Assembly: GCA_002269645.1 (NCBI GenBank)
Contig: NIVC01000648.1
Location: 1-64,000, forward strand
Reading direction: 5' to 3'
DNA: 64,000 nt
Origin: Macrostomum lignano
Taxonomy: Eukaryota
Every line of letters begins with the position of its first letter. Position 1 is the stretch's first letter. Position numbers and translations under genes: made by a program. The notes below the pieces were generated by a model. It made no database searches. It was not told the origin of the DNA and was given only the letters and a program-made list of their open reading frames with translations. Below, in pieces: positions 8,821 to 62,114 of this stretch.

Positions 8821-8824
8821 TGGC

Positions 8825-9230
8825 CGTGGAGTGCAGCCTGCACTGCACTGAAGTGCAGCACTGCCTGCAGCAGAAGGTACGCCTGTTCCGCGCGGCCGTC
8901 GAGCCGATCCTGCTGTACGGCATGGAGGCTGTGCCGCTTGACCGAAACGCGAGAGCGAGCCCTGGACGCGCTTTATTGATCGCTGCTGCCCTACGCACTG
9001 GGCGTGCACTACACGGATCGCCTGCCGATCCGCCCCTGAGCGCCACCCTGCGCCGGCGCCATCAGATGCTGCTGGGCCATGTCTACAGACCCAGGGTCGC
9101 GGTGCGCCCGTCCCTCTTGGCCATGCTGCACCGGCCGACCGAGAAATTGCGCCAGGCCTGCACTGCCACTCTAACGGATTGCCTCATCGCTGACTCCCTC
9201 AGGCTGCTGCTGCCTGCCCCTCCCGCCTGT
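8825..9230 (+). mobile_element. 3' part of the RTE-like ORF, in opposite orientation to the RT part
   Basis: KVRLFRAAVEPILLYGMEAVPL is the post-RT 'K.RLF.A.V...LLYG.E' motif of RTE-clade ORFs. Confidence 0.8.
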
Positions 9231-10903: not shown

Positions 10904-13900
10904 ATGTTTTTTTGCATCAATATTCGTGCGTTATCAATACAGGTTGCTAAAAAGGTGCGGCTGTTCCTGATTTCAAATGTCTGGATGCTTTTAACGTAAG
11001 TCTGTGTAAGGAATTAATTAATTAAAGCGATTACATGTAGATAGTGATGGCTTTGTGATGGGAAAATATAACAATAGGAGCTAAAATTATAGGATTGGAC
11101 AGAAAATGGCGTATTGTAAGTTATAATTTTTTATGGTTTTTATTCTATGAAATTTTCTTTATGAGTCATATGTGTCAAAAGAATGTCATACACGCTAGAT
11201 AAAGTAGTCAGAAAAGGTTATGGTCTGCCGGACTTCACTGACTTCACTGGAGGTGTGTGTAAGAGTTCAATGCATTATTTGGCAGCTGCACGAAGAAGCA
11301 CGAAGAAGAGAAAGCCGGCTGACGCACGGGGCCGGAAAAATGAGGTGGGCGCTCTATAGCAAATCAATGGCTCACACTGTGGTTGACCAACAGGCTAATT
11401 CTCAATAAAGTTCTCGATAATTATATATTATCTCATCTGTAGACATCAATTAATTTATTGCAATTTAAATCAATTTATGCATCTGAAGTAGCAATAGTTA
11501 TTGTCACTAAATATTGTTTTACTCAAGAACGACTTAAGTAGAAGGACAGGAAACATCGTTTCCTGGAATTTTTTTGAAGGCCGGTTTTCCGAAAAATACA
11601 CTACGGAGATGTGAAGTTTTCATATAAGGAAGTTTTAATTTCTTCAGCACAACATTTGTTATTGCTTTTGATAGGAGGCAGACCCAACGTTCATATTTTG
11701 AAATGTTGTGCCTTTCTTATTGCTCTATCGATATTAATAAAGCTTTTCGTTTATAAAATCAGGATTCTATGTTCATTTTTTATTCTACGAACATTTCCTG
11801 TACCTAAAAGTCATAAAATGCATTCATTGTACAGCTCGAAATTTTTGGTTTATGAATCTATTTTGTCATTTCTGTTACAAAGATTTGTTAAACAGTCAGC
11901 TAAGAATGATGTTTTAATGGTTTTTAGGCACAAGACACGTGCAGTTGTATATTAGAATAAAAAGTTAATATAGAATTCTAATTTATTTTATTTTTTTCAG
12001 AAAACTGGCCGTCAAAAAATTTCCAACAAACGATGCTTCCCGTCCTACTTAAGTCGTCCTTGGATTTACTGTATTGCTTTGAAAACAATTTTGTACTTTA
12101 ACTACAAACAGTAGCCTAACCTTTGGCTTTCTCTTTTGAATAAGACAGCGCCTAACACAAAGCAGTAATTCCAATATTATAAACTAACATCACATCATGA
12201 GTGACTCATTTTGCATATTCAGATTCTAAATCGTCATGCATTCTAAATTTTATTCAAATTCATTCTTCTGATAAAGTCAATCCAATGAAATTCACTCTTA
12301 AGGATCGAGGCTGCTCACCACTACTGCATCCAGGACAGTATCAAAGCGTTCTCAATGAACGCTGACTCATACCAGCCGGAGACTCTGCTCACCAACCACA
12401 GGGAGGTGAACGGACTCGTCTCATCGCAACGATGCAGCTGGGAGGTGAGGCTGGGCCGCATGACTCAGCCGCTGCAGCTCATGCTGTCGCTTCGGCTCGG
12501 CCACCGCCGACCGGGTGCTGCTGCCAGCGGACCCGGATGTCCGTCTGAGCTGACCGCGGAGCTGCAGGGTGAGCGATTGAGCCACCGGGGACGGTGACAG
12601 CTGCGGCTGTTTAAAATGACTGACAAGCAAGCTCTGCATTGACGCCCTCTGCTTCCCTCATTCAGGATCCGCGTTCGTCAGAAAGTGGACCAACGCGACC
12701 TCGCTGCCAAAAGCGCCTCTGATTGTACCTGTCATGAGAAGGTTGGTGGCGTTTCTGTCCAGTGATCTCGTTTAATATCTCCAATACTAAGTCCAACTCA
12801 TCCGAATCGCTTGAGCAGCTCGCAGCTGCTGACGGTCCGGTTCTCGACGGGCGACTTCGAGACGAGCGCGAGCTGCGGTCGCATCGAGCTGACCATCGCG
12901 GTGGCCAAGAAGGGCTTCTGCGGCAGGCACATGCTGCTGCATCGGGGCCGCTGCCTCTTCATCTCCGACTCGGAGCTGCGGCTGTCGGATCTGAGCGGGA
13001 CTGGAGTTGAGCTGGCTGCGATCTCCGGGAAGGAGCAGCTGTATGAGCTGATGAGGGACAGTGAGTGCTGAGCTGCTGCTCATGCTGGTCATTGCTCATG
13101 GGTACAGTGCTGAGCTGCTGCTCATGCTGGTCATTGCTCATGGATACAGTGCTGAGCTGCTGCTCATGCTGGTCATTGCTCATGAGTACAGGGCTGGGCT
13201 ACTTTACCTCTTTGTTATCACTATCTAATAATATAAGTTCCCACCAATGTATCATTTCACGCATATTTCAGATAAACAGAGACAGCATCGCTACCCATTC
13301 CTTATGCCTCTGGGCCTAAGCAACGTCCCAGTCAGAGTCGGACTGTTCTGCAATGTATCGTCAGGCAGAATGTTTTATCTTGAGAATGCCGCTCGCTCGT
13401 GCTCACCTGCCCTAATCAGCCCCAGAGATGCCCAAGAACTTTATCTTCTGGTTAGGTAAGTGACAACATGGGAAGAGTGCTGCAGTGTGATCGAATCAAT
13501 GCCGTTGAAATTCGCAGAATCATCACAACAGCCCCTTCTGAACCTGCAGGAAGCCAAGACTTTCTGATGTTGCGCAATCATTGGGGTGCGCATCGCTGAC
13601 GTTTGCTGGATTCTCGACTGCTCAACTCAGCTTCTCGAGCTGCAGCTCCTCAGCCAGGTCTCTGCTGAGCTTTCCCGAGAGCCCCTCAAATGAATCTCTT
13701 GCTGCAGGTGCGAACAACTGCCTGAAGAATTTCCTGGACAGAACTTTTAGTCAGCAGTTGCAGGAGAAACAGTTTAGAAATGGCTCTATTGACCTGTTCG
13801 TAGTTATAACCATCGTATGTTTAGTTGCGATGCTCATGGGGATAATAATTAGATATATTTATTACCGTCGGCGAGGTCAATTTAATGCGGAAGGATTCGA

Positions 13901-14030
13901 ACAGCAAAATAGACGGATGAGCACTGGAGAGGTTCCTGCTGCACACTGCGAGATGAAGAGCGAAGGGCACGCGTCTTGTATCGCCAAACACGAATTTGAC
14001 GACTACCAAGTTGAAACAGCTAAAGTCTAA
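10904..14030 (+). CDS. CUB-like + C-type-lectin-like type I membrane protein, copy A (exons 10904-10995 tentative, 12303-12568, 12666-12740, 12819-13060, 13272-13455, 13550-14030)
   Basis: Phase-consistent GT-AG joins. CUB-like C...CSWEV...PKAPLIV..SQLLTVRFSTGD; CTL-like C....GRCLFIS...GVELAAISGKEQL...CASL...SC; TM LFVVITIVCLVAMLMGIIIRYIYY followed by RRR. Exon 1 is a guess and the ends of exons 2-3 are approximate. Confidence 0.75.
13066..13190. repeat. 42-bp minisatellite, 3 units, copy A intron
   Basis: Unit TGCTGAGCTGCTGCTCATGCTGGTCATTGCTCATGGGTACAG directly after the GTGAGT donor. Confidence 0.95.
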
Positions 14031-14189
14031 TTTTAAAGCCGTAAAACAAAGTTATTAGCACGAGGAATGAACTAAACGCTAGGCAAGCCACCCAGACAGT
14101 ACTTTGAATAGTGAGAGATTGGGTCCGTATAAATCGGTGCCAGGATCTATCACAGATGGATAGATTGGCACCATATTGGAGTTTAACCT

Positions 14190-14343
14190 CCATACACGCA
14201 TTTTTTGCGCCCCTAATCTTGATTTTTCTCCCTCTATATGCATTTTTGCGCCCCTAGCTTAAAAATTGGCGCCCTTATACTCGTGCTGGCGCCCCAAACT
14301 TGGACCTCCCTCCCCCCAAAATGAAACTCTAGATCCGCCACTG
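14190..14343 (-). mobile_element. Fragment or end of a MITE-like dispersed repeat
   Basis: Ends in CTAGATCCGCCACTG (reverse complement CAGTGGCGGATCTAG) with repeated GCGCCCC motifs; no second end or TSD found. Confidence 0.35.
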
Positions 14344-14806
14344 GGTAGGGGTATCGTTCTGTCTTTGAAAATAATCCCTAAAAGCTGACACTAAAGTTGT
14401 TGTAGCGCTCTTTGCTCTGTCTCAAGATAATCTACCGTTGACACTAAAATTTCACCAATGCCACCAATTAAGTTGTGCTAGGCGTTGACTTCTCTCTTTA
14501 ACATCCTGAAGACCTGTCACCGAGTTGTCACAGGGTTTTTATTTTTTATGTACTTTTACTAATAGTTCGTGTATAGCTGATAGCTCATTCAGTGTAATCA
14601 GGTCTTACTGGTAAGCCCATGAAGTATTTTCTGGTAGCGTTTGTACTACTAGCATTTACTGGCCTGGAGCGGTTATATGTGGGGCTGTCTACCCTGTTCC
14701 TTTGTTCCTATTTGCTTCTAGCTCTAGGTGATTTACTTCAGACTACTGAGATACGTCTCGTTTCTAAACAGTTCTCAATTCACCCAATTTTGGGTTTTAA
14801 AGGAAA

Positions 14807-16995
14807 TGACATCTGTTTAATTGCCTCGATCACTGAACATGCAATACAAATTTTTATTTCACTGTTTTTAATTTACTCTTTCTCTGGTCGTTTTAATTGC
14901 TAATATTCGTGCTCTTTGTCTTCTTGCGTCTTTGTCTGCACTGTGTAATGACCTAAATAAAACTTTTTTTGTAAACGAATAAACAATGCTTATTCAGACG
15001 TAAAATATACATAAATGTATATCAAGTATATCAGGTATCAGTACATGTATTGCATTTTTTGTCAAAAAGTAACAGTGCAATATCTATCTTAGAGATTTTC
15101 TGTGTACCTTTTTTCACGCATATATTACATATTTTATCCTCTTACGTAGCTTTTTAATGAATGCATGGTATAATGAATGGCATCATTAAAGCATTTTAAA
15201 TTTCACGCTTTTTTCTGTCAAACTGTGAAATAGTGAAAATGGTAAATGCAATATGTCATTTATTATTCAGCAATCCCTTCTGCGAGAGTTTCCCATGCAA
15301 AATATAACAAATGATAAACGCTTGCTTTTTGCATGCTTGTCATGACATCTGTTTAATTGCCTCGATCACTGAACATGCAATAGAAATTTTTATTTTGCTG
15401 TTTTTTTATTAATATTTTTTCTGGTCGTTTTACTCGTAGTTGCTAATATTCGTGCTTTTTGTCTTTTTTGTCTTTGTATGCATTGGGTAATGACCTAAAC
15501 AAAACTTTCTCGTAAACGAATTAAACAATGCTTATTCAGACGTAAAATATACATAAATGTATGCTAAGCAACATTGAAAAGTCGCCATCACAGAAGATTC
15601 GGTCTGTGGTCGCCACTTTTGAGAGTGCAGGTTAAAGTCTCTCAATCTTGCGAGTGACGCAACTCAGGTACGCCGCGGCAGACTCGAGTTGAGGAATGAA
15701 GTGGGGGGAGCGGTGTGCGAAGGTTAAACGGATTAAAGCTACCCCGATCAGTTTTCTCACATCTTTTATTTCAGAATAGTCCAAGAGAAATTGCTCAGTA
15801 GCGAATAGAGTGGCTGTAGGGATCTCCAGATAAGATACAAAGTAGACTACTATAAGTAGCAACATAAAGATGCAAAAAACCTGAACGCTAAAAACTGCAA
15901 ATTGTCACACGATCTATTTTTAAGACCACGAAAGCAACAAGTGACCATCTTTTGCAACATTTAAATTTAGAACTCCGAATATGGTATCGGCGCTTAAAGC
16001 TAATGTATTCCATAGGGGTCAATTTCCAAAGCGCTAAACTGTCACCTACTAAAAATAATCTGTTGTTCAAGAATTTTTCCTATAAATACAAGCCAAAATC
16101 CGAGCTAAAAATCTCAGACTCGGAGCAGCCTCTGTAGATCTTGGAGCTTGCTGGAACAGCTAAGCGAGGCTACATCTCTGAGGAACTACCTACCGTTCGG
16201 TAAGCTCTTGTTCGAGCCTTTGTTATTGAATTGATTTTTTGAGAGCGATTTATTGCCGGCCGTTACTGTTCAGTTGATTTCACTGAGACTATTGAATTTG
16301 AGGCCTCCAATTTTCCTAAGGGATTGGATAGGATCTGCGGACCGATTCCGATACCCTTAGAGGATTATCGAGTTGATTGATTTGGTTATCCTAGATTAAC
16401 CGATAGGAGCACACGACTCCGATTCTGTTAATTCTAGAAGAAGACGCCCCTCTTGGAGGACCTCGTTATTATTACAGAAAGTAGATTTTATTTTAAGGGC
16501 GTATCGTAGATATTGATTACTGAGTTTAAGGCCTGTATTGATTTGCGTTCGAGAAATGCTGCGACGTCGATTTTATTGTTACGCTCTCACCTTCGGCCGA
16601 TTCTAGACTTCAAGAAGACTACCCCGGGAGGAACAGCTCTACGGAGACGAGCTCTACAGACGCGCGCGACAAAGAAGAGGAACCCGCAACAGTAAGTGAT
16701 CACTGACTTTGTTCCCAGGCTTAAGTGTCTGGAAGTGGGAGTTTTCGGGAGACTGATCACCTCCCGAATCAACTCTTCATCAGTACATGTATTGCATTTT
16801 TTGTCAAAAAGTAACAGTGCAATATCTATCTTAGAGATTTGCTGTGTACCTTTTTTCACGCATTTATTATTATTACATATTTTATCCTCTTACGTAGCTT
16901 TTTAATGAATGCATGGCGTAATGAATGGCATGATTAAAGCATTTTAAATTTCACGCCTCTTTTCTGCGAAACTGTAAATTGGTAAAAAATGGTAA
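14807..16995. repeat. Local direct duplication of ~450 bp (14807-15250; second copy split as 15342-15560 and 16783-16995)
   Basis: ATGACATCTGTTTAATTGCCTCGATCACTGAACATGC occurs at ~14807 and ~15342; GTACATGTATTGCATTTTTTGTCAAAAAGTAACAGTGC occurs at ~15041 and ~16783. Confidence 0.85.
15558..16782 (+). mobile_element. LTR-like insert (~1.2 kb) related to the solo LTR at 7741-8771
   Basis: Starts TGTA and ends CATCA; shares TATAAATACAAG...CTCAGA...GGAGCAGC...GAGGA...CGGTAAGC in the same order as the - strand of 7741-8771. No TSD found. Confidence 0.45.
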
Positions 16996-18359
16996 ATTTC
17001 TGATACGGCAACAGAGTGAAAGCAATTTTAATATTTCACTATTTCATACAAGTATCACTCAGCAAGTGCTGTACATCTTGTGAATTGTAGACTGGTGGAG
17101 CCTTTTTAGGCAACCTGTTCAATTTCCGCTAGAACTGGCTGTACTCGTAGATAATGCAAGAAGTGAAAACACAATAAAATAGAAGAAAGAATTTTCGGCA
17201 TGTTTGAAATTTGTCATCAAACTGTGAGAGTGAAGAAGTCAGCTGTGTCAAGTTATTTTTTTAATTACGCCTAAGAACAGAATAAGGAACAGGACTGAAA
17301 TGGACACCGACCCGCGGTTGCAGCGAGGAGACGGAGGAGACGGCCCATTCCGCTAGCACCTGGTGGCCAAAAACTTCCACAGAAGTGATGTCGTTAAGGC
17401 GTAACCTGTCGGTCTCGCCTGCAGTGCCGTTCTCCTCACCAATAAGAGCTTCATGGCTCTTGTCAGCTCTCTTCACTTCTCTCCTCTCTACTCTCAGCTC
17501 TCTCCCACTCTCCCCTCTCCCGTCTAAGTAGCACTGTGCTGAGATCAGATCATTTGACAGCATCTCTGATTGGCTAGCTAATTCGCTGAACAATAACTGC
17601 ATCTGAAAGTTCGAATAACAGTTTCGCATTGAGCATCACGCACGCACAGGGCATCGAACTCATAGATACAGAAGAGTCTCAATAACAATAACTAAAGTTG
17701 TATAAGTATTAAATTAGCTGAATTAGATGTTTAAGGCAGAAACAGATTCTTCGAGTTTACCATATGTATGATTTTATTGTCTCGAGATAAAAAATTGGAG
17801 CTACAGTAGTATGAGACAAACCTGCTTGTATGTTCGCCTGTCCTCATTGACAATTATCATCGAGTTGTTGCATGTTAATCTTCTATTTCGAAATTGGAAT
17901 ATAGTGGCAGCAGACTACTCATTAGTAGGAACACTAAGCATTGACTAATGTAGGGATAATCTATTGATCTATCAATCTGAGAAGAGCGATCTGTAGGTTC
18001 TATGCATTCAATACTACTATAGCAATTGAATGAAATTGCAGATCAAAATCATTAATTGGCGTTCACCACTATAGCAAGCCATAGCAATGCCGTACTATTG
18101 TCGTACGGAGGCCACAATAGTTTCAATCGTTGTACTCCTTAACCCAGAACTGCATTTGCATACCAGACTGGATACTGGTTACCAGTGCCCACTTACTCGA
18201 TAAAGTCGAGTGCAAGCTACCCATATTCTACTCGATTTGCATAACTGTGACATCTGAAACTACATGGAGGAGTGACATATAGGTTTTTATTTTTTCAAGC
18301 GTTATAGAGTCCACTAGCCAAGCTTGATGGATTGCTTTGGCTGAAACATCCGCCACGCA

Positions 18360-21066
18360 ATGACCTGGAGCTGGCTGCTTCTCACAGCTCCAGCGTTTGT
18401 CAGCCTCTTCATCATCAACTGCGAGGCTGCTCACCACTACTGCATCCAGGACAGCATCAAAGCGTTCTCAATGAACGCTGACTCAGACCAGCCTGAGACT
18501 CTGCTCACCAACCACAGGGAGGTGAACGGACTCGTCTCATCGCAGCGATGCAGCTGGGAGGTGAGTCTGGGCCGCATGACTCAGCCGCTGCAGCTCATGC
18601 TGTCGCTTCGTCTCGGCCACCGTCGACCAAGTGCTGCTGCCAGTGGACCCGGATGTCCGTCTGAGCTGACCGCGGAGCTGAAGGGTGAGTTATAGGGGCT
18701 CCGCAGCATTGATGGCAGCGACACGGAAGCAATCAGTATCAAATTAGGAATTAGGAGGCGGGCCTGCGAGAATTGCCACCTCAACTGAATAGCTTCTGTA
18801 GGGTGCCAGCTGCATAGGCACAAGTGAAGAGGCTACGATAGTCAGTGAACCATTCTGACGAACCTTCTTGTTTTTCTTCTTTGCCGTAGCCGTCATTTCT
18901 TCCTTCTTCTTGCCTTGAATACAGATATCTCCCTTCTGCCACGTCTGATGTCAGTAATATTCGAGCTTTGTCTGTTAAACGATCTCCTCCACATGTTCTG
19001 GTTCCTATCCCTATACCTCCTCCATTTTTCTCGGAAACCAGACATTTGCCTTTTTCTCTTTTCATGAAATCCTTTGCACTCTTATGGAGCATTTCATTTC
19101 AAATGCTTTGAATGTCTCCACACTTCTCTTCCCCAGAGTTCAGCTCTCGCAACCACAGAGCAGTGTTACTCAAATGACCGCCTTTGTTAAGTTCATCAAG
19201 CATATCATTGAGCTGGTTGCGACGCCAATTCGAATTCTGATCGCTTCCTCCGATGTCCCATTCTCCGTGATGATTGATCACAAATATTAAGATTTCTTCA
19301 CGTGTTTTTTGACGACGCTTAGTAGATACTCATTCAGAAAAATCCACGTATCTCCGTAGGAGACAGCTGAGAGCTTCATTTTGCAGACTCTCGCAGACGA
19401 GACAAGGAGTGCAGTGCAATATCGATTGATCGTATATCGATAGTTAGAAAACTTTTCACAGAAGCAATATTTTTGCAAAGCAAAATCAATGAATTTTAAA
19501 GCACGTAATTAAAGAAATTGACTTCATATCGACTATTCACCGCGTAAAGATACGGAGTTGCGCAAGACCTGGAGAAATGGAATGAATCTTCCAAAGGCTC
19601 CATTGATCGTGTCAGTAATGCACAAGTGAGTTTCATAGCGTGGTTTTTCAATGCACTCCAGAGCTCGTAAGGATGTCTACATGCACAAACTCTTCAACAG
19701 CTCGCAGCTGCTGACGGTCCGGTTCTCGACGGGCGACTCCGTGCCGAGCGCGAGCTGCGGTCGCATCGAGCTGACCATCGCGGTGGCCAAGAAGGGCTTC
19801 TGCGGCAGGCACATGCTGCTGCATCGGGGCCGCTGCCTCTTCATCTCCGACTCGGAGCTGCGGCTGTCGGATCTGAGCGGGACTGGAGTTGAGCTGGCTG
19901 CGATCTCCGGGACGGAGCAGCTGGATGAGCTGATGAGGGACAGTGAGTGCTGAGCTGCTGCTCATGCTGGTCATTGCTCATGGGTACAGTGCTGAGCTGC
20001 TGCTCATGCTGGTCATTGCTCATGGGTACAGTGCTGAGCTGCTGCTCATGCTGGTCATTGCTCATGGGTACAGTGCTGAGCTGCTGCTCATGCTGGTCAT
20101 TGCTCATGGGTACAGTGCTGAGCTGCTGCTATTCTCAATTTCAGACGAACGCAGGGCCAAACAATACCCATTTCTCAAGCCGCTGAACTTGAGCAAACAA
20201 GCAAGAGTGGGAGTTGTTCGCTGTTCCGCCTCAAAGACTTTTTCTGTCCATTTCAACTCCACCAGCGGCGTGTGCTCACGGGAACGTTTCAACTCAACTG
20301 CCGTTTCAGATCTGGCAGTTAAAGGGTGAGCAGTTTTTTTCTCTATTTATTGATATAACAGTAAATAATTAACCTAGTCATAGGTTGAACACTCGCTCAC
20401 TGACTTGAAACGATCAAGCAGAATGATAAATGATTACATGTACATCCCTGCTTTTCACTGCCTGTAGAAATCTCACTGCCGATACTCGGTGCACAGCCTT
20501 GCAAGCTGATCCTGAAGGCAGAGCCGCGCTGCACAGCTGCTCATGCAGAGCGAAGATGCTTTCACTGCTCAGCTTCAGCGAGACTCCAGTCGGTTCAGAG
20601 TCGGGCAAAGTGAGAACAAAAAACTGTTGGCTACATGTACATCACTTACGAGTATGTGGGGCAAACTCTATCCACAGAACTCCACCGATCTCCCGGACAA
20701 CTGGCAAATCTGGACAGAAGTTAATCGTCGCTTTCCTGATCGCGCTGTACATAACTTTTGCTATCAGTAGTGTGTGCATGTGCCACTCAAGAATCCGCAA
20801 GGTTGGTTTACAGTACTTGTTTTGTGTCCATAATTATGCTTTTATTTATATTCTTCTAGCTCAGCTTGCAAAGACAGATATTGACAAGTCTTTATTTGAA
20901 TCTTCCGTTTCAGATGATCCGATCTGGACTGAAACAGGTGCAGAGGGTGGGTCAAGGCTCTGACTTTGCTGCTGCTGCTGCTGCTGCTAAAAACGAGCCC
21001 CAGTTGCATACTCATATTTTTATAGAAAGGCTGTTTACTCCGTACAGCCCTCTTTCTGAGGTGTAA
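18360..21066 (+). CDS. CUB-like + CTL-like type I membrane protein, copy B (exons 18360-18684, 19550-19625, 19701-19942, 20145-20325, 20468-20801, 20865-20937, 21026-21066)
   Basis: Signal peptide MTWSWLLLTAPAFVSLFIINCEA; all joins phase-consistent; TM LIVAFLIALYITFAISSVCMC. The tail ends ...PIWTETERLFTPYSPLSEV* if the 20938-21025 intron is used, otherwise it stops at 20963. Confidence 0.8.
19948..20130. repeat. 42-bp minisatellite, ~4.4 units, copy B intron
   Basis: Same unit as 13066-13190; fills almost the whole intron 19943-20144. Confidence 0.95.
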
Positions 21067-22567: not shown

Positions 22568-23204
22568 AATTTACTTTATAACCAAGGATAGGATTTTCGC
22601 ACTTTGGACAAACTACTGATATCATTGCTAGTTGAGTTCTTGTGCTAAGTTGTGACGTTGACAGTTCCTTTGTCTCCCCAGTTCTTCAGCTGGTATTCGC
22701 TGGGAATATTTAATGTGTATTTTGGTTTGTTCAATGGGTTGTACTTTTATGTTTGCTGAAGGTGGTTGGCAATACTTTATTTAACTTTTTAAATTTTGTG
22801 GCTTGGGAGGTGATGTCTCTTGGGAGCTCGGCTGTTGTAGTCTTGCAGAATGGAATCTGTGTTACAGCGGAAGACGCTATGAGAAACTTGTCCTGCATTT
22901 GAAATTCGAATTGATATCGTTGAATTTTCATGCTGTCTGAATCGGTAAATGTGACGATAGAAGGCTGGACCGGCCCTGGTACTCAAGGAGATTTTGTCGA
23001 CAATATTACTCGTGTAATTAAGTAGTTACCGGTGGACGTATAGAGAAAGCGTTCAATAATTTTAGCTTAAACTAGCAATTCGCCCTCCCCGTTGGGGGCC
23101 AACAAAAAGAAGAATAAATATTTTTGAATAAAATGCATGTCGCTTCTGAACTGTCAGTCTTAACATCTCAGCAATTCCACTGTAAGTCTTGACATCGCAG
23201 TGAT

Positions 23205-23643
23205 TCCCCCCTAAGCCTTGACATCTCATCAATTCCCCCCTAAGCCTTGACATCTCAGCAATTCCCCCCTAAGCCTTGACATCTCAGCAATTCCCCCTAA
23301 GCCTTGACATCGCATCAATTCCCCCTAAGCCTTGACATCTCATCAATTCCCCCCTAAGCCTTGACATCGCATCAATTCCCCCCCCCCCTAAGCCTTGACA
23401 TCTCATCAATTCCCCCCTAAGCCTTGACATCTTATCAATTCCCCCTAAGCCTTGACATCTCATCAATTCCCCCTAAGCCTTGACATCGCATCAATTCCCC
23501 CCCCTAAGCCTTGACATCTCATCAATTCCCCATAAGCCTTGACATCTCATCAATTCCCCATAAGCCTTGACATCGCAGCAATTCCCCCTAAGCCTTGACA
23601 TCTCAGCAATTCCCCCTAAGCTCTGACATCGCAGCAATTCCCA
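23205..23643. repeat. ~29-bp minisatellite, about 15 copies
   Basis: Unit (C)nTAAGCCTTGACATCTCATCAATT with a variable C run. Confidence 0.95.
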
Positions 23644-25008
23644 AATTAATCGTTTATGTTCGACATAATGTTTCTTTTATTTTTGAAATTATGCTTCTTT
23701 CATGTTGTCATCTTTTGATAATTGTACCGCTAAATTAAACTGCACTTATGGATGAATTTCATGTAAATATTTTATAGTACAGTGAGAGTCATCTGCTACG
23801 AAAAGTTGTGCCACATTTTTTTCACGTTTCACGCTGTGTAAGTCAGTGATTCAACCCAGCATCAGTAGCTGATTGAAAGCGGAAGTGCACCATAGAGGGC
23901 TGCGCTAATGACTCACTTGTACTCACATGGAATAGTGACTCCAAATACGTAGAACAGGGAGCTGGTCTGTGCAATCAGCGCGATGTTGATTTTTACCTGT
24001 CTTAAGGCCGTCCCCTGTCCCCCTCTCCTTAGGCTCAACCGAAGGTATCTTTTCTCACCACTTTTATCGCTCAGGCAGTGAAAACGCTGAGCACTTTGTC
24101 TGCCACTACCGGGTGGTCTTCACCAGGCCAGACTCACTCAAGTCTGGCCAAACCCGGTTCTCTCCGATGTTCGCAGGCCCAAGAAAATACCGCTGCTCAC
24201 CCGGTACCTCTAGGATGCAATGACCCCCCCCCCCTGAGCGACATCACTTCGATGGTAGCTATCTGTCGTCAGGGGCTCGCGAAACGGGTGTTCTAGATTA
24301 TTCTGCAGCTGGTGCCCCCTACAGCTAAGACAAGCCAAGCCAAGTCCACCTGTCTACAAATCCCCACACATGACCAACTCTGTGCAGTGCATGCAGTGTA
24401 TGACATAGCCTACGACACTGTCAAGTGCATTCGTTTGTTTGTAGAAAGACGGTTTTTGGTACTGTCATAGGCTACACTCTCCTGAAAGCACTACTCAGAA
24501 AATTTACACTGTACACTGTAGCTAGCAATGGACTGACTAAAGATGGAAACAATAACGTGCTCTGCTAGCAGGCATTACAGCGCCCGCGCAAAACAGTTGA
24601 TTGTCTCTCTGCCAGACACCTCCGACAGAAGACGGAAAGGCAGCGCAGTGGGCATTATCTGAAAAGTGCGCGCATCAGGTAGGGATTCAGAGCTGTATGT
24701 ATCGCATTTCTTGGAATATTTCAGCCGACATCAGATTGGTGTTTGAATTCTGAGGGTGTAATTTTCTATCGGCACTGGCCAAAACCCTGCGGAATTCAAA
24801 TTAGCACAAGTCTTTAGAGTCTCAGATTTTGTTGTTATAATACACATTTGATTGCTTTTTAACTTTTAAAAATAGCTTTATAGTTGTCAACTGTCATTTT
24901 AATTAGTCTGCAAATATACGAGCTATAGCATTAGCTGATTAGTTGATTAGGTAATTAGTTAATTAGTTTTGCAATTTTTCAGTCGCATTTTATTAAAATC
25001 TGCTTCAG

Positions 25009-28000
25009 ATGTGCAGCAAACAGCTGCTTGCATTTCTCCTGCTCATCGCGGTATCTCAGACTCCAATTCGAGGGTAAGTAAGCTAAGCACTTGGCTCTCA
25101 ATGTAATGTGAGCAATACGACCAGTGAGGATTGCATTATTATGGTGTGGGATTGGCAAAAATTGCTTTGGAAATGGGGAGGCACTTGTATCGAACTGCTA
25201 GCGTTATTTTTCTAATGTATAAAGTATGATGTAAAAAAAATAAAAGAAAAGAAGGCCTTCATAGCTAATGGAATTTGAAGTTTGTTCTTTTTTAATTATT
25301 AACACTGGCTTCCTTGACAGCCAACCAGATTTGCTGCTTAGATCTGATCCATAAAGAACGTGCCATACATGTTATCCACCTTCATGCTTGCGCACTAACT
25401 GTTCCCCATTCAGGACACTCGCTGAGCGGCACCAGTGCCACAGCTCAGGACACCTGCTGCAACTGAGGGACGGTGAGACGGAAACCCTGGACACACTCAA
25501 CAGGGATCAGAGCGAGCTGACTGCATCGCAGACCTGCCTATGGGAAGTGAAACCGCCGGCCAACCTGATCGAGCCGGGCAATTTCATCTTGAATATCGCT
25601 CGGAAAAGAGGCGGGTCTGAGGCGGCGATGCCCGATGGCAATCCACCGAGCTGCGATTGGAGCCTCACGGTGGAATTGACAGGCAAGCTGGATTCAAGGT
25701 CATGGCGGAGGTCAAAAGTGAATATTATGAGTATTAATAGCTCAGTTATGGATTGCACTTTGCAGGATCCAGCTTCAGCAAGGCGTGGCACGACCGGGAC
25801 CTGCCGCCGAAGGCACCCTTGGTAGTCCCTGTGACCAACAGGTATGGTTCTGATTTTGAATTTAAAAAGCAGCTGGTGGCCTCTTGACTAGTTTATGTAA
25901 CATTGCGCTGACTGACTGTGTTGGTCCGGTGTGTTTCTGTCCTGCAGCTCGCAGCTGCTGACGGTCCGGTTCTCGACGGGCGACTTCAAGCCGAGCGCAA
26001 GCTGCGGTCGCATCGAGCTGACCATCGCGGTGGCCAAGAAGGGCTTCTGCGGCAGGCACATGCTGCTGCATCGGGGCCGCTGCCTCTTCATCTCCGACTC
26101 GGAGCTGCGGCTGTCGGATCTGAGCGGGACTGGAGTTGAGCTGGCTGCGATCTCCGGGACGGAGCAGCTGCATGAGCTGATGAGGGACAGTGAGTGCTGA
26201 GCTGCTGCTCATGCCGGTCATTGCTCATGGGTACAGTGCTGAGCTGCTGCTCATTCTGGTCATTGCTCAAGTGTACAGTTTATAACCGCCGTTATTTCAG
26301 ATGATGACAGAACGAACGCGCACCCATTCATCAGACCCTTAAACCTGACCAGACCTGTGAGAGTGGCGGTGTTTCGTTGCAACAAAATCATTCAATGGAC
26401 GCAGGTTGCACAGACAGTGAGCTCCAGTTTGTGCGTGATCGGGAATTTCAGCACGACTGGGGCTGCTCAGGAGTCCTTTACTCGACGGTTCGTTGCTTTT
26501 CGTTCCATAGACGTACAGGGCTATGATTTTAAGTTCACGCTAAAGACTGTATCTTGAGTCCTTGGCTACCTGAGCAATTCCCATTGAGTCCTTGATTACC
26601 TGAGCGATTCCCATTGAGTCCTTGGCTACCTGAGCGATTCCCATTGAGTCCTTGGCTACCTGAGCGATTCCCATTGAGTCCTTGGCTACCTGAGCGATTC
26701 CCATTGAGTCCTTGGCTACCTGAGCGATTCCCATTGAGTCCTTGATTACCTGAGCGATTCCCATTGAGTCCTTGGCTACCTGAGCGATTCCCAATGAGTC
26801 CTCGATTACCTGAGCGATTCCCATTGAGTCCTTGGCTACCACCTGAGCGATTCCCATTGAGTCCTTGGCTACCTGAGCGATTCCCAATGAGTCCTTGATT
26901 ACCTGAGCGATTCCCATTGAGTCCTTGGCTACCTGAGCGATTCCCATTGAGTCCTTGGCTACCTGAGCGATTCCCATTGAGTCCTTGATTACCTGAGCGA
27001 TTCCCATTGAGTCCTTGGCTACCTGAGCGATTCCCAATGAGTCCTCGATTACCTGAGCGATTCCCATTGAGTCCTTGGCTACCACCTGAGCGATTCCCAT
27101 TGAGTCCTTGGCTACCTGAGCGATTCCCAATGAGTCCTTGATTACCTGAGCGATTCCCATTGAGTCCTTGGCTACCTGAGCGATTCCCAATGAGTCCTCG
27201 ATTACCTGAGCGATTCCCATTGAGTCCTTGGCTACCACCTGAGCGATTCCCATTGAGTCCTTGGCTACCTGAGCGATTCCCAATGAGTCCTTGGCTACCT
27301 GAGCGATTCCCATTGAGTCCTTGGCTACCTGAGCGATTCCCATTGAGTCCTTGGCTACCTGAGCGATTCCCAATGAGTCCTTGGCTACCTGAGCGATTCC
27401 CATTGAGTCCTTGGCTACCTGAGCGATTCCTATTGAGTCCTTGGCTACCTGAGCGATTCCTATTGAGTCCTTGGCTACCTGAGCGATTCCCATTGAGTCC
27501 TTGGCTACCTGAGCGATTCCTATTGAGTCCTTGGCTACCTGAGCGATTCCCATTGAGTCCTTGGCTACCTGAGTGATTCCCATTGAGTCCTTGGCTACCT
27601 GAGCGATTCCCATTGAGTCCTTGGCTACCTGAGCGATTCCCAATGAGTCCTTGGCTACCTGAGCGATTCCCATTGAGTCCTTGGCTACCTGAGCGATTCC
27701 CAATGAGTCCTTGGCTACCTGAGCGATTCCCATTGAGTCCTTGGCTACCTGAGCGATTCCTATTGAGTCCTTGGCTACCTGAGCGATTCCCATTGAGTCC
27801 TTGGCTACCTGAGTGATTCCCATTGAGTCCTTGGCTACCTGAGCGATTCCCAATGAGTCCTTGGTTACCTGAGCGATTCCCAATGAGTCCTTGGCTACCT
27901 GAGCGATTCCTATTGAGTCCTTGGCTACCTGAGCGATTCCTGGCTGTTCTTGGCAGTCCTTGGCTGTTTAAGAAAATGTAAACACCATATTACCTAATTA

Positions 28001-28434
28001 ATCATTCCAGGAACCAGTCCATTTCATCACAGGTAGACTGCGCATCAATCAGTGCTGAACCTGACGATTCGGAGAAACTAAAATTGTCATTCATTGACTG
28101 CGACCAGCCGCAGCACCTGTTGCTGAGCTTCCTAATTGAGCCAATCAATCAAGATTTGCAACACAACTCCAACTGCTTGGAATCCACAATAACCGGCTGT
28201 AAAGATTTGAGCATGCATGTGATTTTTAAAGAATCAACTGATAAAGAAACGGACAGTTCAGATAAAACTGATCTGATAGCTTTATTTGTGTCTGTGACAG
28301 CCTCACTGCTAGTGTCGGCCGTGATTCTGGTAGTTGCTGTTAAATTTTTTATTTTTAAGCGACAAGGACCTCGTCGCAAATCTAGAAGGTCCAAACCCTT
28401 TGATTCATTGTCTGGAATCCCTTTAAGATCTTAG
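25009..28434 (+). CDS. CUB-like + CTL-like type I membrane protein, copy C (exons 25009-25073, 25414-25682, 25766-25841, 25948-26189, 26301-26487, 28011-28434)
   Basis: Signal peptide MCSKQLLAFLLLIAVSQTPIRG; CLWEV and SCDWSLTVELT CUB-like motifs; the shared 242-nt exon; TM LIALFVSVTASLLVSAVILVVAVKFFIF. Requires a GC donor at 25683. Confidence 0.75.
26195..26275. repeat. 42-bp minisatellite, 2 units, copy C intron
   Basis: Same unit and same intron position as in copies A, B and D. Confidence 0.9.
26554..27940. repeat. 30-bp minisatellite, about 46 copies, in intron 5 of copy C
   Basis: Unit GAGTCCTTGGCTACCTGAGCGATTCCCATT; source of the spurious (MGIAQVAKDS)n ORF. Confidence 0.97.
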
Positions 28435-28989
28435 TTGTTGAAATTAAATCACACTATGTTTGTTCTGGAAAGAGACTATCGGTGCCATATGAAAAAGTAT
28501 GGTGAGTACCTGACTTACCTGAGTTACCTGACTGCTAAAACTGACGTCATCACAATTTATTTGTGATGACGTCAGTTGTGATGACGTCATACAATTTTGT
28601 TTTGCGTATTTTTTAGAACGGCTGTTCACTCCGTCAGCCCTCTGTCTGAAGTGTAACTTTTGTACGCTTTGTATTTTTTGCGTGCTAACAAGTTCATTAC
28701 TGCAAGCATTATTAATGAACGCTACCCGCCAGATCTAGAACTGCGCCCAACCTAAGTACCGTGTTTTCCCATAAGATCATAACCTCCGAAACCACCCCAA
28801 CCTGATTCGATTGTTTGTCTTCTATCAGTTTTATGTGATTATTATACTACTAACATCCATGTTTAAGAGAAAATACAAATAATTGAATAATCGGCCAGTT
28901 CGTCATCGATCACAATCAAGCTTCTACGTGTTCGTCACTAATTTGCGTACATGTAGCAGCCCGTTAGCACGCGAACTCAATTACGTCAG

Positions 28990-30504
28990 ATCAAATATTC
29001 GTCACAAAGTGGAATGTGTGTTACAGCAGAAGACGCTACGGAGGTGCACCCTTGGTAGTCCCTGTGACCAACAGGTATTATTCTGATTTTGCATTTAAAA
29101 GCAGCTGGTGGCCTCTTGACTAGTTTATGTAACATTGCCTGACTGACTGTGTTGGTCCGATGTGTTTCTGTCCTGCAGCTCGCAGCTGCTGACGGTCCGG
29201 TTCTCGACGGGCGACTTCGAGCCGAGCGCGAGCTGCGGTCGTATCGAGCTGACCATCGCGGTGGCCAAGAAGGGCTTCTGCGGCAGGCACATGCTGCTGC
29301 ATCGGGGCCGCTGCCTCTTCATCTCCGACTCGGAGCTGCGGCTGTCGGATCTGAGCGGAACTGGAGTTGAGCTGGCTGCGATCTCCGGGACGGAGCAGCT
29401 GGATGAGCTGATGAGGGACAGTGAGTGCTGAGCTGCTGCTCATGCTGGTCATTGCTCATGGGTACAGTGCTGAGCTGCTGCTCATGCTGGTCATTGCTCA
29501 TGGGTACAGTACTGAGCTGCTGCTCATGCTGGTCATTGCTCATGGGTACAGTGCTGAGCTGCTGCTCATGCTGGTCATTGCTCATGGGTACAGTGCTGAA
29601 AAAATATGTAACAGAGAGAGTGAGTAAAAACGCAAATCGCAAAGCACACGGTAACCCAAAAGTTCTCATGCTGTTTTGTGCTCATACAGATATTTTGTGC
29701 TCATACTGATGTTTTGTGCTCATACTGATGTTTTGTGCTCATACTGATGTTTTGTGCTCATACTGATGTTTTGTGTTCATACTGACGCATTGCAGATGCT
29801 CTTGAAGATGCCACTGGATTCGAGCAGATGCCTGAGATTCGGAGTTTTTCGCTGCTCTGATTCGGTTCAGCCTTATGTTTGGGACTCAAACTGCAAACGA
29901 ATTTCTGCAGCGCAGTTATATTTACGATTTGAAAACCCGAGTCAGGAATCAAGGTAAGGCTCGGAAATCTCGAGGTTACATTTACACACGATAAATTTAC
30001 GTGTATGCCTTCGACAGTATACTGCTTTCATCTATGTTGCCAATTTGCTCTGACTTCAGATCTGAGCCGTCAACCCTCCAGTGCGGCTCTCTGAAGATTG
30101 GTAGCAGTAAAACTCTGGAGCTCGCGTTTTCGGATTGTAGCACCCCTATGAGATCCCTGCTGAGCTTTGCCAACCCGGCACCTGTCAGTATGGGCTCAAA
30201 GGAATTGAACCAGTGCATTTTAACATTGACCAAGTTCTGCCGAAATGCATCAACAATAAGTGCTTCAAATTCTAAAGAGTCAGCCAGCAACAGTCTTCTT
30301 TTTGAAGTACCCATGTCGATAATTACAATTCTGATTATTTTGTCATTCTTTTTTGTTGTATTTTGTACTCGTCGGAGGCGTTTAACTCGGAGCCAATTCA
30401 ACAATATTTTAAATTACGTTTGGTGCGGAAGATGCAGACAGTTGAATCCACGCGCATCTATTAATTCCGTCGCTGCCATATTTGACAGGAGCAGGCGGAA
30501 GTGA
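28990..30504 (+). CDS. CUB/CTL-like membrane protein, copy D, 5'-incomplete or pseudogenised (exons 28990-29074, 29179-29420, 29796-29953, 30060-30504)
   Basis: Contains the shared 242-nt exon, the CGSL...LAFSDC...RSLLSF motif and TM IITILIILSFFFVVFC followed by RRRR. No signal-peptide or CUB exon found upstream, and the phases of 29420 (phase 1) and 29796 (phase 0) do not match. Confidence 0.55.
29426..29785. repeat. 42-bp minisatellite (4 units, 29426-29598) followed by a 19-bp repeat (~29670-29785)
   Basis: 42-bp unit as in the other copies; 19-bp unit CTCATACTGATGTTTTGTG. Confidence 0.9.
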
Positions 30505-35627: not shown

Positions 35628-35777
35628 TGCTGCTCTTTGCTTGCAGAAGAGCACTTCCCTCTGGAGGGTGGACCAACTGCTGCAGTTGCTAGGGTTGGAA
35701 TGTATGGGCTACGGATTCCAGCTGTCAATTATATTCTGAAACCAATTGATTGGTGTTGGAAAAAGGGTGTTCAAACA

Positions 35778-38970: not shown

Positions 38971-39104
38971 GAGCAAAGCTAAGAGACAAGAGAAGCAAGC
39001 AATAGACAGATGAAGCATAGAAATGAATAGCCGAAAATCCAATAAATCAAGGTGCCAGATTAACAGTAACGCATACGAAATTAAGGCAACATAAAATTTT
39101 TTAA

Positions 39105-60379: not shown

Positions 60380-62029
<1,650 letters not shown>

Positions 62030-62114
62030 TCATCATTTAAGTTCAGCTGGACATGCTCCAGATCCCTTGTAGCCTTCTCAGAAGATGCTTTTAGCCCCAG
62101 TTTTTCACATCCAA

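What the first reader, a model, noticed from the sequence alone, without database searches (positions are those of the whole stretch)
12819..29420. One 242-nt exon is homogenised across four otherwise highly diverged paralogs
Seen: exons 12819-13060, 19701-19942, 25948-26189 and 29179-29420 have the same length and differ by only about 5 substitutions per pair (counted by eye). Most changes are amino-acid changes at three spots: FET/SVP/FKP/FEP, K/T and Y/D/H. Flanking exons share only scattered residues. Inference: exon-restricted gene conversion or exon shuffling keeps the CUB-CTL junction constant while the rest of the ectodomain diversifies, a constant/variable design like that of immune or recognition receptor families.
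Basis: partly seen in the sequence, partly recalled or inferred. Interest (0 to 1): 0.8.

Follow-up and report, generated by a model that had tools for sequence, protein, structure and literature searches.

The report
One exon kept identical by gene conversion
In a flatworm (Macrostomum lignano) cluster of old, very different membrane-protein genes, one 242-base exon and the short repeat array next to it are kept about 98% identical by DNA copying between the genes; this is a clear new example of a known process, not a new mechanism.

Summary
The four 242-nt exons have canonical splice sites and differ at 4-5 positions per pair.

- **Contrast with the rest of the genes:** exon-3 dS is 0-0.05. 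Exons 2, 4 and 5 have saturated synonymous sites and 22-50% amino-acid identity.
- **Organism and genes:** Macrostomum lignano. Three complete tandem genes and one truncated copy belong to a lineage-specific single-pass membrane-protein family.
- **Domains:** neither CUB nor C-type lectin is detectable.
- **Tract limits:** the identity is not exon-restricted. It starts at the acceptor and runs through a 42-nt minisatellite that begins at the donor.

Two further cluster copies from an independent PacBio assembly show the same pattern. Exon-3 divergence stays at 2-3% whether the flanks differ by 0.75% or 7%. GC3 is 0.88-0.90, against 0.42-0.64 in other exons and in relatives that are not homogenised. 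Informative sites are mutually incompatible.

Recurrent inter-paralog gene conversion ("merohomogenization") explains this best. The same segment is also a recombination joint. One related locus has two genes with 94% identical 5' halves and unrelated 3' halves that switch there, and another gene is truncated there.

Amino-acid changes cluster in five codons. The immune-receptor-like "constant/variable" reading is untested. This is a new member of a known kind, of moderate interest.

The parts
10904..14030 (+). Unit 1 gene, complete, 446 aa. Exons: 10904-10995 (start codon and signal-peptide-like stretch), 12303-12568, 12666-12741, 12819-13060 (homogenised exon 3), 13272-13455, 13550-14030 (transmembrane helix, tail, stop).
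   Evidence: Splice sites and a single open frame. Exon 0 was located with database protein P0007.
12819..13060 (+). Exon 3, copy 1 (FET, K, Y variants).
13064..13200 (+). 42-nt minisatellite, 3.3 copies, starting at the donor site of intron 3. It is part of the homogenised tract.
   Evidence: TRF; alignment of flanks.
12306..12573 (+). Second homogenised tract, shared only with unit 2 (18422-18689): the mature part of exon 1, 96% identical, dS 0.12.
18360..20963 (+). Unit 2 gene, complete, 439 aa. Exons: 18360-18684 (signal peptide fused to exon 1), 19550-19625, 19701-19942 (exon 3), 20145-20325, 20468-20963.
19701..19942 (+). Exon 3, copy 2 (SVP, T, D).
19946..20130 (+). 42-nt minisatellite, 4.4 copies.
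25009..28434 (+). Unit 3 gene, complete, 420 aa. Exons: 25009-25073 (signal peptide; the ATG directly follows an AG), 25414-25682 (GC donor, conserved in three copies), 25766-25841, 25948-26189 (exon 3), 26301-26487, 28011-28434.
25948..26189 (+). Exon 3, copy 3 (FKP, T, H).
26193..26279 (+). 42-nt minisatellite, 2.1 copies.
29046..30504 (+). Unit 4, a 5'-truncated copy. Parts: relic of the last 30 nt of exon 2 plus intron 2 (29046-29178, shared with unit 3), exon 3 (29179-29420), exon 4 (29796-29953), exon 5 (30060-30504). There is no exon 0 or exon 1. A 5-nt deletion between 29806 and 29807, relative to the L001 counterpart, shifts the frame to a stop at 29858-29860.
29179..29420 (+). Exon 3, copy 4. 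Its protein equals the consensus of all ten genomic copies.
29424..29599 (+). 42-nt minisatellite, 4.2 copies.

Best explanation
The window holds a tandem cluster of genes from a Macrostomum lignano-specific family of single-pass membrane proteins. The layout is a signal peptide, a beta-rich N-terminal domain, a cysteine-containing middle region, a transmembrane helix and a short tail. The paralogs are old, since their synonymous sites are saturated. One segment of about 330-430 bp is repeatedly copied between them by non-reciprocal homologous recombination (interlocus gene conversion, with occasional unequal crossing-over). This segment consists of exon 3 and the 42-nt minisatellite that starts at its donor site. 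All copies therefore behave as one sequence pool that sits about 2-3% apart. Shown here: the tract limits, the DNA-level nature of the identity, its decoupling from flank divergence, the GC3 peak, and the recombinant and truncated genes whose joints lie at this segment. Inferred: the minisatellite is the recombinogenic element that starts or sustains the exchanges; the tract stops at the acceptor because intron 2 offers no homology; most codons of the exon are under purifying selection while five codons tolerate or favour change. The practical result is that the segment is a fixed joint at which different 5' halves (N-terminal domain) and 3' halves (membrane-proximal region, transmembrane helix, tail) are recombined among cluster members.
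For: (1) DNA-level identity. dS is 0-0.05 in exon 3 against saturated synonymous sites in exons 2, 4 and 5. The identity continues through the intronic 42-nt array and stops at its end, and upstream it starts at the acceptor. All other segments align like shuffled sequence. (2) Independent replication. Two further cluster copies from PacBio assembly GCA_002269645.1 (L001 and L002) have the same exon and array in 6 more complete copies and 1 partial copy, each with its own variants and array length. (3) Decoupling. Exon-3 divergence is 2.1-3.3% whether the flanks differ by 0.75% (W_u2/B_u2, excess, Fisher p = 0.0014, Poisson p = 0.0006) or by 6.6-7.3% (deficit, p = 0.004 and 0.0017). Counterpart copies differ as much as paralogs do. 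(4) Reticulation. 9 of 15 informative site pairs fail the four-gamete test, and B_u2 carries the unit-1-type FET patch. (5) GC-biased conversion signature. GC3 is 0.88-0.90 in exon 3, 0.42-0.61 in exons 4-5, and 0.58-0.64 in the exon-3 equivalents of two family members that are not homogenised. (6) Recombination joints at the segment. L001 gene u3a is an intact 401-aa ORF that joins unit-3-type exons 0-3 to a fifth, unrelated 3' half after a 9.6-copy array. L002 unit 2 breaks off right after its array, before a copia-type element. (7) Exon 3 is not uniquely conserved in the wider family, and distant members lack the array at the donor. (8) Selection within the exon. There are 10 synonymous and 14 nonsynonymous steps, and 11 of the nonsynonymous steps fall in codons 13-15, 71 and 75 (clustering p = 0.0025).
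Against: No second species or population sample was available. 'Paralogs more alike than orthologs' is therefore shown only between subgenome or haplotype copies of one inbred line. The post-split signals (excess in W_u2/B_u2, four-gamete failures) rest on few sites, two of which have three states. They could be inflated if short-read polishing mixed reads among near-identical copies. The variation is star-like, with no cluster-specific fixed variants, which also fits a single older homogenisation followed by independent mutation. The role of the minisatellite is circumstantial. It folds no better than shuffled DNA, introns of this genome are full of minisatellites anyway, and only two rearrangement joints were seen. 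Expression and function of the genes are unknown.
Confidence: 0.8

Rival explanations
1. A single past event, not an ongoing process. Exon 3 plus the array spread once through the cluster, by a burst of conversion or unequal crossovers before the three cluster copies separated. Each copy has since simply accumulated its own mutations.
For: The variation is star-like. All pairs differ by a similar 1.7-3.7%, and there are no cluster-specific fixed variants. Exon-3 divergence is of the same order as the flank divergence between the window and L001.
Against: W_u2 and B_u2 differ 4.5-fold more in exon 3 than in 2.9 kb of flanks (p = 0.0014), and 5 of the 8 differences are states found in other paralogs. 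9 of 15 site pairs are incompatible. A GC3 of 0.9 against 0.6 in relatives needs many rounds of biased conversion. A first-time conversion between paralogs with no remaining homology is mechanistically unlikely.
Confidence: 0.12
2. Selection for a shared function drives the pattern. Conversion supplies the variants, but homogenised copies are favoured because the exon encodes a common interface (a shared ligand, co-receptor or oligomerisation surface), as in paired receptors. The five variable codons would be specificity residues. This concerns the cause and is compatible with the mechanism above.
For: Outside the five hot codons the exon has 3 nonsynonymous against 10 synonymous steps. The hot codons are multi-allelic and clustered. 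The exon contains family-wide invariant residues (C182, L202, A203). There is a precedent in KLRC and CEACAM receptors (PMC2832619).
Against: The start of exon 4 is at least as conserved across the family, yet it is not homogenised. A 5'-truncated copy, frameshifted in this window, keeps a consensus exon 3. Neighbouring units in another cluster (P0009) are only about 65% alike in the equivalent region by my own estimate from the sequences. No functional data exist.
Confidence: 0.25
3. Purifying selection alone keeps the exon identical, with no DNA exchange.
For: The exon is coding and partly constrained.
Against: Synonymous sites are as conserved as nonsynonymous ones (dS 0-0.05) while they are saturated in the neighbouring exons. 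The identity includes 87-185 nt of intron. Distant family members are only about 25-45% identical in this region.
Confidence: 0.02
4. Assembly or polishing artefact, meaning collapsed, chimeric or cross-polished repeats.
For: Near-identical 0.4-kb repeats can attract mis-mapped short reads during polishing, which could create some of the mosaic single-base variants.
Against: Each copy lies between unique, unalignable flanks, in phase with its own gene. Each has its own variants and its own array length. The same arrangement recurs on two other contigs of a long-read assembly. Polishing cannot create 242-430 nt of identity between unrelated sequences.
Confidence: 0.03
5. The identical exon is a splicing hub. 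Read-through transcripts join exons 0-2 of one unit to exon 3 and the 3' exons of a downstream unit, giving combinatorial proteins. This would include use of the truncated unit 4 as an alternative 3' end of unit 3.
For: Unit 4 lacks its own 5' exons, lies 745 bp after unit 3's stop, and is intact from exon 3 onward in L001. Phases are compatible. Database models P0001, P0002 and P0006 join exons of different units.
Against: Those models have non-canonical joints or are what transcript assemblers produce at identical exons. Every complete unit has its own start, transmembrane helix and stop. No transcript data were available here.
Confidence: 0.05

Closest known systems
Merohomogenization of ligand-binding-domain exons in paired leukocyte receptors (KLRC/NKG2, KLRI, KLRB, PIR; Immunogenetics 2011, PMC3210942)
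   Same: Concerted evolution is restricted to part of a gene within a tandem cluster. The patches are a few hundred nucleotides long and cover one exon plus short intron flanks. Synonymous and non-coding sites are included, the pattern is patchy, and it is attributed to gene conversion while the rest of the genes stay distinct.
   Different: Here the organism is a flatworm and the family is an uncharacterised orphan one. The remainder of the genes is far more diverged (saturated). The tract is a single exon bounded on one side by the acceptor and on the other by a minisatellite. No opposing signalling motifs or shared ligand are known. No between-species comparison was possible.
Concerted evolution of the N-domain exon in CEACAM paired and decoy receptors (PMC2832619, PMC7042247, PMC11646289)
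   Same: One extracellular-domain exon is kept similar between paralogs by gene conversion while other exons diverge. Some members escape homogenisation.
   Different: Those are immunoglobulin-fold receptors with known pathogen ligands. Selection for shared binding is documented there and is not documented here.
Human fetal globin genes HBG1/HBG2, where the conversion tract ends at a simple-sequence repeat in intron 2 proposed as a recombination hotspot (Slightom, Blechl and Smithies 1980; from my own knowledge, not checked here)
   Same: A conversion tract between tandem paralogs has one edge at an intronic tandem repeat, which is suspected to promote the exchange.
   Different: That case involves two recently duplicated, globally similar genes and a dinucleotide repeat. 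This case involves four to five anciently diverged genes and a 42-nt minisatellite abutting the donor site.
Minisatellite-associated germline conversion with co-conversion of flanking DNA (human MS32 and similar loci, Jeffreys and colleagues, 1990s; from my own knowledge)
   Same: Arrays vary in copy number between copies, and exchange extends into the adjacent unique sequence on one side.
   Different: Those events are mostly allelic. Here the exchange would be between paralogous loci, and no direct mutation data exist.
Hybrid genes and domain shuffling by non-allelic recombination in receptor clusters (KIR, opsin OPN1LW/MW, glycophorin, RHD/RHCE; from my own knowledge)
   Same: Recombinant genes combine the 5' half of one paralog with the 3' half of another. 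Gene content differs between haplotypes.
   Different: In those clusters the paralogs are similar along their whole length. Here the only shared homology available for the exchange is the exon 3 plus array segment.
Constant exons shared by splicing (clustered protocadherins, UGT1A; from my own knowledge)
   Same: Variable parts are combined with an invariant part.
   Different: Those loci have one physical set of constant exons used by all variable exons. Here every gene carries its own physical copy, so constancy is kept by recombination, not by splicing.

Membership tests
Partial-gene concerted evolution by gene conversion (merohomogenization) | One segment of tandem paralogs is far more similar than the rest of the genes. 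| tested here: met
   Exon 3 is 97.9-98.3% identical in the window. Exons 2, 4 and 5 have 22-50% aa identity and saturated pS. Other segments align like shuffled sequence.
Partial-gene concerted evolution by gene conversion (merohomogenization) | The similarity includes synonymous sites and adjacent non-coding DNA. | tested here: met
   dS is 0-0.05. The identity runs through 87-185 nt of intron 3, and for units 3 and 4 through intron 2.
Partial-gene concerted evolution by gene conversion (merohomogenization) | Homogenisation continued after lineages split, so that paralogs are as close as or closer than orthologs in the tract only. | tested here: inconclusive
   Between three cluster copies of one genome, exon-3 divergence is independent of flank divergence, and counterparts differ as much as paralogs. 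No second species was available, and polishing cross-talk cannot be excluded for single sites.
Partial-gene concerted evolution by gene conversion (merohomogenization) | Patchy, mosaic sharing of variants between paralogs. | tested here: met
   9 of 15 informative site pairs are incompatible. B_u2 carries the unit-1 FET patch. Two of the sites have three states, which weakens the count.
Paired (activating/inhibitory) receptors | Shared ligand-binding domain combined with tails of opposite signalling function. | not testable with these tools
   The tails differ between units, but I did not scan them for signalling motifs, and no ligand is known.
CUB domain (Pfam PF00431) | Significant match to the CUB profile. 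| tested here: not met
   No Pfam hit at E <= 10 for units 1-3 or at E <= 1 for ten distant relatives. UniProt automatic names for family members are mutually inconsistent.
CUB domain (Pfam PF00431) | CUB-type beta-sandwich fold. | tested here: inconclusive
   The AlphaFold2 fragment model is all-beta but low confidence (pLDDT 57.6). Foldseek returned only weak generic beta-sandwich matches, TM <= 0.41.
C-type lectin-like domain (Pfam PF00059) | Significant match to the Lectin_C profile or a solved CTLD. | tested here: not met
   There is no Pfam hit and no PDB sequence-profile hit below E = 0.1. The full-length model has pLDDT 39. The motif resemblance (C..W..f.g.CY.fS ... LAsI.s.eE) is recalled from memory and is only a lead.
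Alternative-exon or shared-constant-exon loci (Dscam, protocadherin, UGT1A) | One transcription unit in which variable exons are spliced to a single shared constant exon set. | tested here: not met
   Each complete unit has its own start codon, its own exon 3, its own transmembrane exon and its own stop.
Mobile element carrying an exon | Copies at unrelated sites, not tied to one gene family. | tested here: not met
   All 10 complete copies and 1 partial copy sit at the same position and phase in homologous genes. No protein outside the family contains the sequence. Terminal repeats and target-site duplications were not searched for.

The most novel reading that the evidence does not exclude
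The identical exon plus array is not just a by-product of recombination. It would be a maintained 'joint' that lets a germline-encoded surface-receptor family re-assort N-terminal (recognition) halves and C-terminal (membrane and tail) halves by recombination between cluster members, with five hypervariable residues inside the constant piece. That would be a modular, recombination-based diversification system in a flatworm, functionally comparable to paired-receptor or KIR-type clusters of vertebrates.
Probability: 0.15. Interest if true: 0.7.

Novelty: new member of a known kind. Interest (0 to 1): 0.42.

Why it matters
Four points make this useful.

- **A clean natural example of local conversion:** gene conversion holds about 0.4 kb of DNA constant for as long as it takes the surrounding gene to diverge to saturation. 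The tract has sharply defined edges and a local GC3 signature. That makes it a convenient system for measuring ectopic conversion and GC bias in a flatworm that can be bred and made transgenic.
- **A practical warning for M. lignano genomics:** the identical exon plausibly produces chimeric gene models (P0001, P0002 and P0006 join exons of different units). It will also confound short-read mapping, expression estimates and RNAi specificity for this family.
- **Rapid structural turnover:** cluster content differs between the subgenome copies of this neopolyploid through gain, loss, truncation and recombinant genes.
- **A possible new receptor class:** if the family proves to be a recognition-receptor family, the pattern would extend 'merohomogenization' beyond vertebrate immune receptors.

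Tried and rejected
- **Pfam** on the three gene models and on ten distant relatives found no CUB, no Lectin_C and nothing else credible.
- **Profile search of PDB sequences** found nothing below E = 0.1.
- **AlphaFold2.** The single-sequence fragment gave pLDDT 57.6 and the six-sequence full-length run gave pLDDT 39. Foldseek on the fragment returned only noise. The domain question stays open.
I worked around this by putting X at the split junction codons.
- **Rfam** on the whole window found no RNA family.
- **Folding the array as single-stranded DNA** gave z = 0.5, so there is no special structure.
- **Literature search for the gene identifiers** found nothing. No paper was found on gene conversion in this family.
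- **A classical GENECONV run** was not done. When all sequences are homogenised in the same stretch there are almost no polymorphic sites inside it, so that test has no power. I used per-segment divergence, Fisher tests against flanks, and four-gamete tests instead.
- **Hypothesis that L001 u3a is unit-3 5' plus unit-2 3'** was rejected, because no unit-2-type exons 4-5 are present.
- **Hypothesis that L001 u3a is truncated** was also rejected, because it has its own distinct exons 4 and 5.
- **Hypothesis that unit 1 lacks a start** was rejected, because exon 0 was found 1.3 kb upstream.
- **A first all-against-all ORF comparison** was swamped by minisatellites and had to be redone.

Full report
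**1. The observation**

BLAST of the exon against the window finds exactly these four copies. Each copy follows an AG and precedes GTGAGT.

**2. Organism and genes**

I assembled gene models by hand from splice sites, paralog similarity and database proteins.

- Unit 1 (10904-14030), unit 2 (18360-20963) and unit 3 (25009-28434) each read as one open frame of 446, 439 and 420 aa.
- Each has an N-terminal hydrophobic signal-like stretch and a transmembrane stretch followed by basic residues in the last exon.
- Intron phases are the same in all units. Unit 3 uses a GC donor in its second intron (after exon 1), and that donor is conserved in three copies.
- Unit 4 (29046-30504) has no exon 0 or exon 1, and only the last 30 nt of exon 2. 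In this window a 5-nt deletion (between 29806 and 29807) shifts the frame to a stop at 29858-29860. The counterpart in another locus reads through in frame.

The only homologs among 5.8 billion clustered proteins, and among 1.84 billion representatives searched with a family profile, are from Macrostomum lignano. The family is lineage-specific as far as these databases go.

Pfam finds no domain in the three models at E <= 10, or in ten distant relatives at E <= 1. A profile search of PDB sequences finds nothing. AlphaFold2 gives only a low-confidence all-beta N-terminal domain and the transmembrane helix. Foldseek returns noise. UniProt's automatic names for family members contradict each other (CUB, ZP, MHD, FHA, Ricin-B). 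The label 'CUB-CTL junction' is therefore unsupported. The motif resemblance to the start of a C-type lectin-like domain is only a lead.

**3. How unusual exon 3 is**

| Segment | Comparison | Result |
|---|---|---|
| Exon 3 | all six paralog pairs | dS 0-0.05, dN 0.01-0.03 |
| Exons 2, 4, 5 | paralog pairs | pS 0.59-0.92 (saturated), 22-50% aa identity |
| Exon 3 | nucleotide alignment vs shuffled | z = 6.5-9.1 |
| Exon 1 | units 1 and 2 only | z = 6.6 |
| Every other exon and intron | nucleotide alignment vs shuffled | indistinguishable from shuffled (|z| <= 2.3) |

Exon 1 of units 1 and 2 is thus a second, smaller homogenised patch (12306-12573 vs 18422-18689, 96%, dS 0.12).

**4. Anatomy of the tract**

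The identity is not limited to the exon.

- Downstream it continues through a 42-nt minisatellite. The array begins at the donor site and has 3.3, 4.4, 2.1 and 4.2 copies in units 1-4. The similarity ends where the array ends.
- Upstream it begins at the acceptor, because intron 2 is specific to each lineage.
- Only units 3 and 4 also share intron 2 and the last 30 nt of exon 2.

Identity at synonymous sites and in intron DNA rules out purifying selection as the sole cause.

**5. Other copies of the cluster**

Two database proteins led to two other loci in the PacBio assembly GCA_002269645.1.

- L001 is colinear with window 15247-37545 at about 95-97%.
- L002 is colinear with window 12166-20055 at 91-98%.

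M. lignano is a neopolyploid reported to have three subgenomes (PMC10733133), which fits three cluster copies. Together they give ten complete exon-3 copies and one partial copy. All sit at the same position and phase, and each has its own variants and array length (2 to 9.6 copies). This makes an assembly artefact very unlikely.

**6. Evidence for recurrent exchange**

(a) Counterpart genes in different cluster copies differ in exon 3 by 5-8 nt. Most paralog pairs differ by 4-9 nt, and pairs involving the indel-bearing copy B_u1 by 10-15.

(b) Exon-3 divergence stays at 2.1-3.3% whatever the flanks do.

| Pair | Flank divergence | Exon-3 divergence | Test |
|---|---|---|---|
| W_u2 vs B_u2 | 0.75% | 3.3% | Fisher p = 0.0014; Poisson p = 0.0006 |
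| W_u2 vs A_u2 | 6.6% | 2.1% | p = 0.004 |
| W_u1 vs B_u1 | 7.3% | 2.1% | p = 0.0017 |

(c) Five of the eight W_u2/B_u2 differences are states present in other paralogs. B_u2 carries the unit-1-type FET patch.

(d) 9 of 15 pairs of informative sites fail the four-gamete test. Two of the six sites have three states, which weakens that count.

(e) GC3 is 0.88-0.90 in exon 3 against 0.42-0.61 in exons 4-5 of the same genes. In two distant family members that are not homogenised, the equivalent exon has GC3 0.58-0.64, like its neighbours. This is what GC-biased gene conversion predicts for a tract converted many times.

One caveat applies. Single-base mosaic patterns among near-identical repeats can be affected by short-read polishing, so (c) and (d) need read-level confirmation. 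Points (a), (b) and (e) and the basic contrast do not depend on this.

**7. The segment is also a recombination joint**

- In L001 there are two unit-3-type genes. Their exons 0-3 are 205/217 aa identical.
- After a 9.6-copy array, the first one (u3a) continues with an exon 4 and an exon 5 that match none of units 1-4 and are absent from the window and from L002. They carry the family motifs, a transmembrane helix and a stop, and they give an intact 401-aa frame with canonical splice sites.
- In L002, unit 2 breaks off directly after its 2.5-copy array. It is followed by sequence like the 3' flank of a unit-1-type gene and a copia-type retroelement.
- The L002 unit-1 gene has a unit-2-type exon 2 between unit-1-type neighbours.

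The cluster is thus a mosaic that exchanges segments. The exon 3 plus array segment is the one piece of homology common to all members. Two structural breakpoints coincide with it.

**8. Why this exon?**

In the wider family the exon-3 region contains conserved residues, but so does the start of exon 4, which is not homogenised. Distant members keep the same exon boundaries and phase but have no array at the donor. Two neighbouring units within P0009 are only about 65% alike in this region by my own estimate from the sequences. Functional constraint alone does not single out exon 3.

The feature that is specific to this cluster is the abutting minisatellite. I infer that the array promotes or sustains ectopic exchange, and that the tract ends at the acceptor because intron 2 provides no homology. 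This step is inferred, not shown. The array has no special predicted DNA structure, and minisatellites are common in this genome's introns.

**9. Selection inside the exon**

Across ten copies there are 22 variable columns and 24 mutational steps, of which 10 are synonymous and 14 nonsynonymous. Eleven of the nonsynonymous steps fall in five codons (13, 14, 15, 71, 75). Two nucleotide positions have three states, and the clustering is significant (p = 0.0025). The remaining 75 codons show 3 nonsynonymous against 10 synonymous steps. The exon is therefore a constrained scaffold with a few hypervariable residues. Whether those residues are specificity determinants or mutational hot spots cannot be told here.

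Between cluster copies, exon 1 shows purifying selection (dN/dS 0.15-0.31), while exon 4 runs at or above 1 on small counts.

**10. Comparison with what is known**

The closest described phenomenon is 'merohomogenization'. [quoted passage not shown] CEACAM N-domain exons behave likewise (PMC2832619, PMC7042247).

From my own knowledge, the fetal globin conversion tract bounded by an intronic simple repeat, minisatellite-associated co-conversion, and hybrid genes in KIR or opsin clusters are mechanistic relatives.

The present case differs in several respects:

- the host is a flatworm;
- the family is an orphan one;
- the divergence of the rest of the genes is extreme;
- the tract is one exon plus an abutting minisatellite.

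It is not a shared-constant-exon locus of the protocadherin or UGT1A type, because every gene has its own copy.

**11. Verdict**

Conversion and shuffling hold. The 'exon-restricted' claim and the 'CUB-CTL' label do not. The receptor-design idea is untested.
- This is a new member of a known kind, of moderate interest.
- It has practical relevance for annotation and expression work in M. lignano, where the identical exon plausibly yields chimeric gene models.

Noticed in passing
window 2796-3808, 21012-22562, 23159-23642, 26554-27940, 34369-35218, 39409-40303, 51279-51663, 52346-52590, 60743-61589, 62103-64000: The window is unusually rich in long minisatellite arrays (for example 77 nt x 20, 30 nt x 46, 28 nt x 17). 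Several lie in introns or between the cluster genes. The 28-nt-spaced arrays at 52346-52590 and 60743-61589 are about 95% alike. L004 14263-15397 also holds a 28-nt array, which I did not compare with them.
   Followed up: partly
window 34001-40000 and 62001-64000: GC skew is very strong (+0.43 to +0.58 at 34-38 kb, and -0.75 at 62-64 kb). It coincides with tandem-repeat arrays.
   Followed up: no
window 34347-35708 (- strand); L001 22526-25494 (- strand): A PH-domain gene lies on the minus strand just downstream of the cluster (Pfam PH, E = 2.5e-6). Part of it overlaps a coding-frame tandem repeat (34369-35218).
   Followed up: partly
window 25683 (and L001 9930, 15627): The intron after exon 1 of the unit-3-type genes uses a GC donor (CAG|gcaag) at the position where units 1 and 2 have GT. 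It is conserved in all three unit-3-type copies, so it is probably a genuine GC-AG intron.
   Followed up: partly
window 25003-25011: The start codon of unit 3 directly follows an acceptor-like 'cttcag'. This would suit spliced-leader trans-splicing, which is known in this species. No transcript data were checked.
   Followed up: no
L002 17853-19399: A copia-type LTR retrotransposon gag / pre-integrase region (Retrotran_gag_2 E = 2e-43, zf-CCHC, gag_pre-integrs) sits about 0.7 kb downstream of the point where L002 unit 2 is truncated.
   Followed up: yes
window 8745-9296 (+): A GC-rich open frame contains '...EPILLYGMEAV...', which reminded me of the tail of a non-LTR retrotransposon reverse transcriptase. 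Pfam found nothing at E <= 0.01.
   Followed up: partly
Database proteins P0001, P0002, P0004, P0006: Public gene models for this family are chimeric or truncated. P0001 joins exons of units 1, 2 and 3. Three models splice exon 3 to the unit-3 exon-5 acceptor out of frame ('...ELMRD-RTSP(S/F)HHR*'), which could be an artefact or a real soluble isoform that lacks the transmembrane helix.
   Followed up: partly
window 26301-26487 vs L001 16288-16470: Exon 4 of unit 3 is 100% identical between the window and L001, although the surrounding unit differs by about 5%. This is a local anomaly that I did not explain.
   Followed up: no
L001 10908-11535: A fifth type of 3' gene half (exons 4-5, with a transmembrane helix) is present only in locus L001. 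The window has no counterpart between units 2 and 3, so gene content differs between cluster copies.
   Followed up: yes
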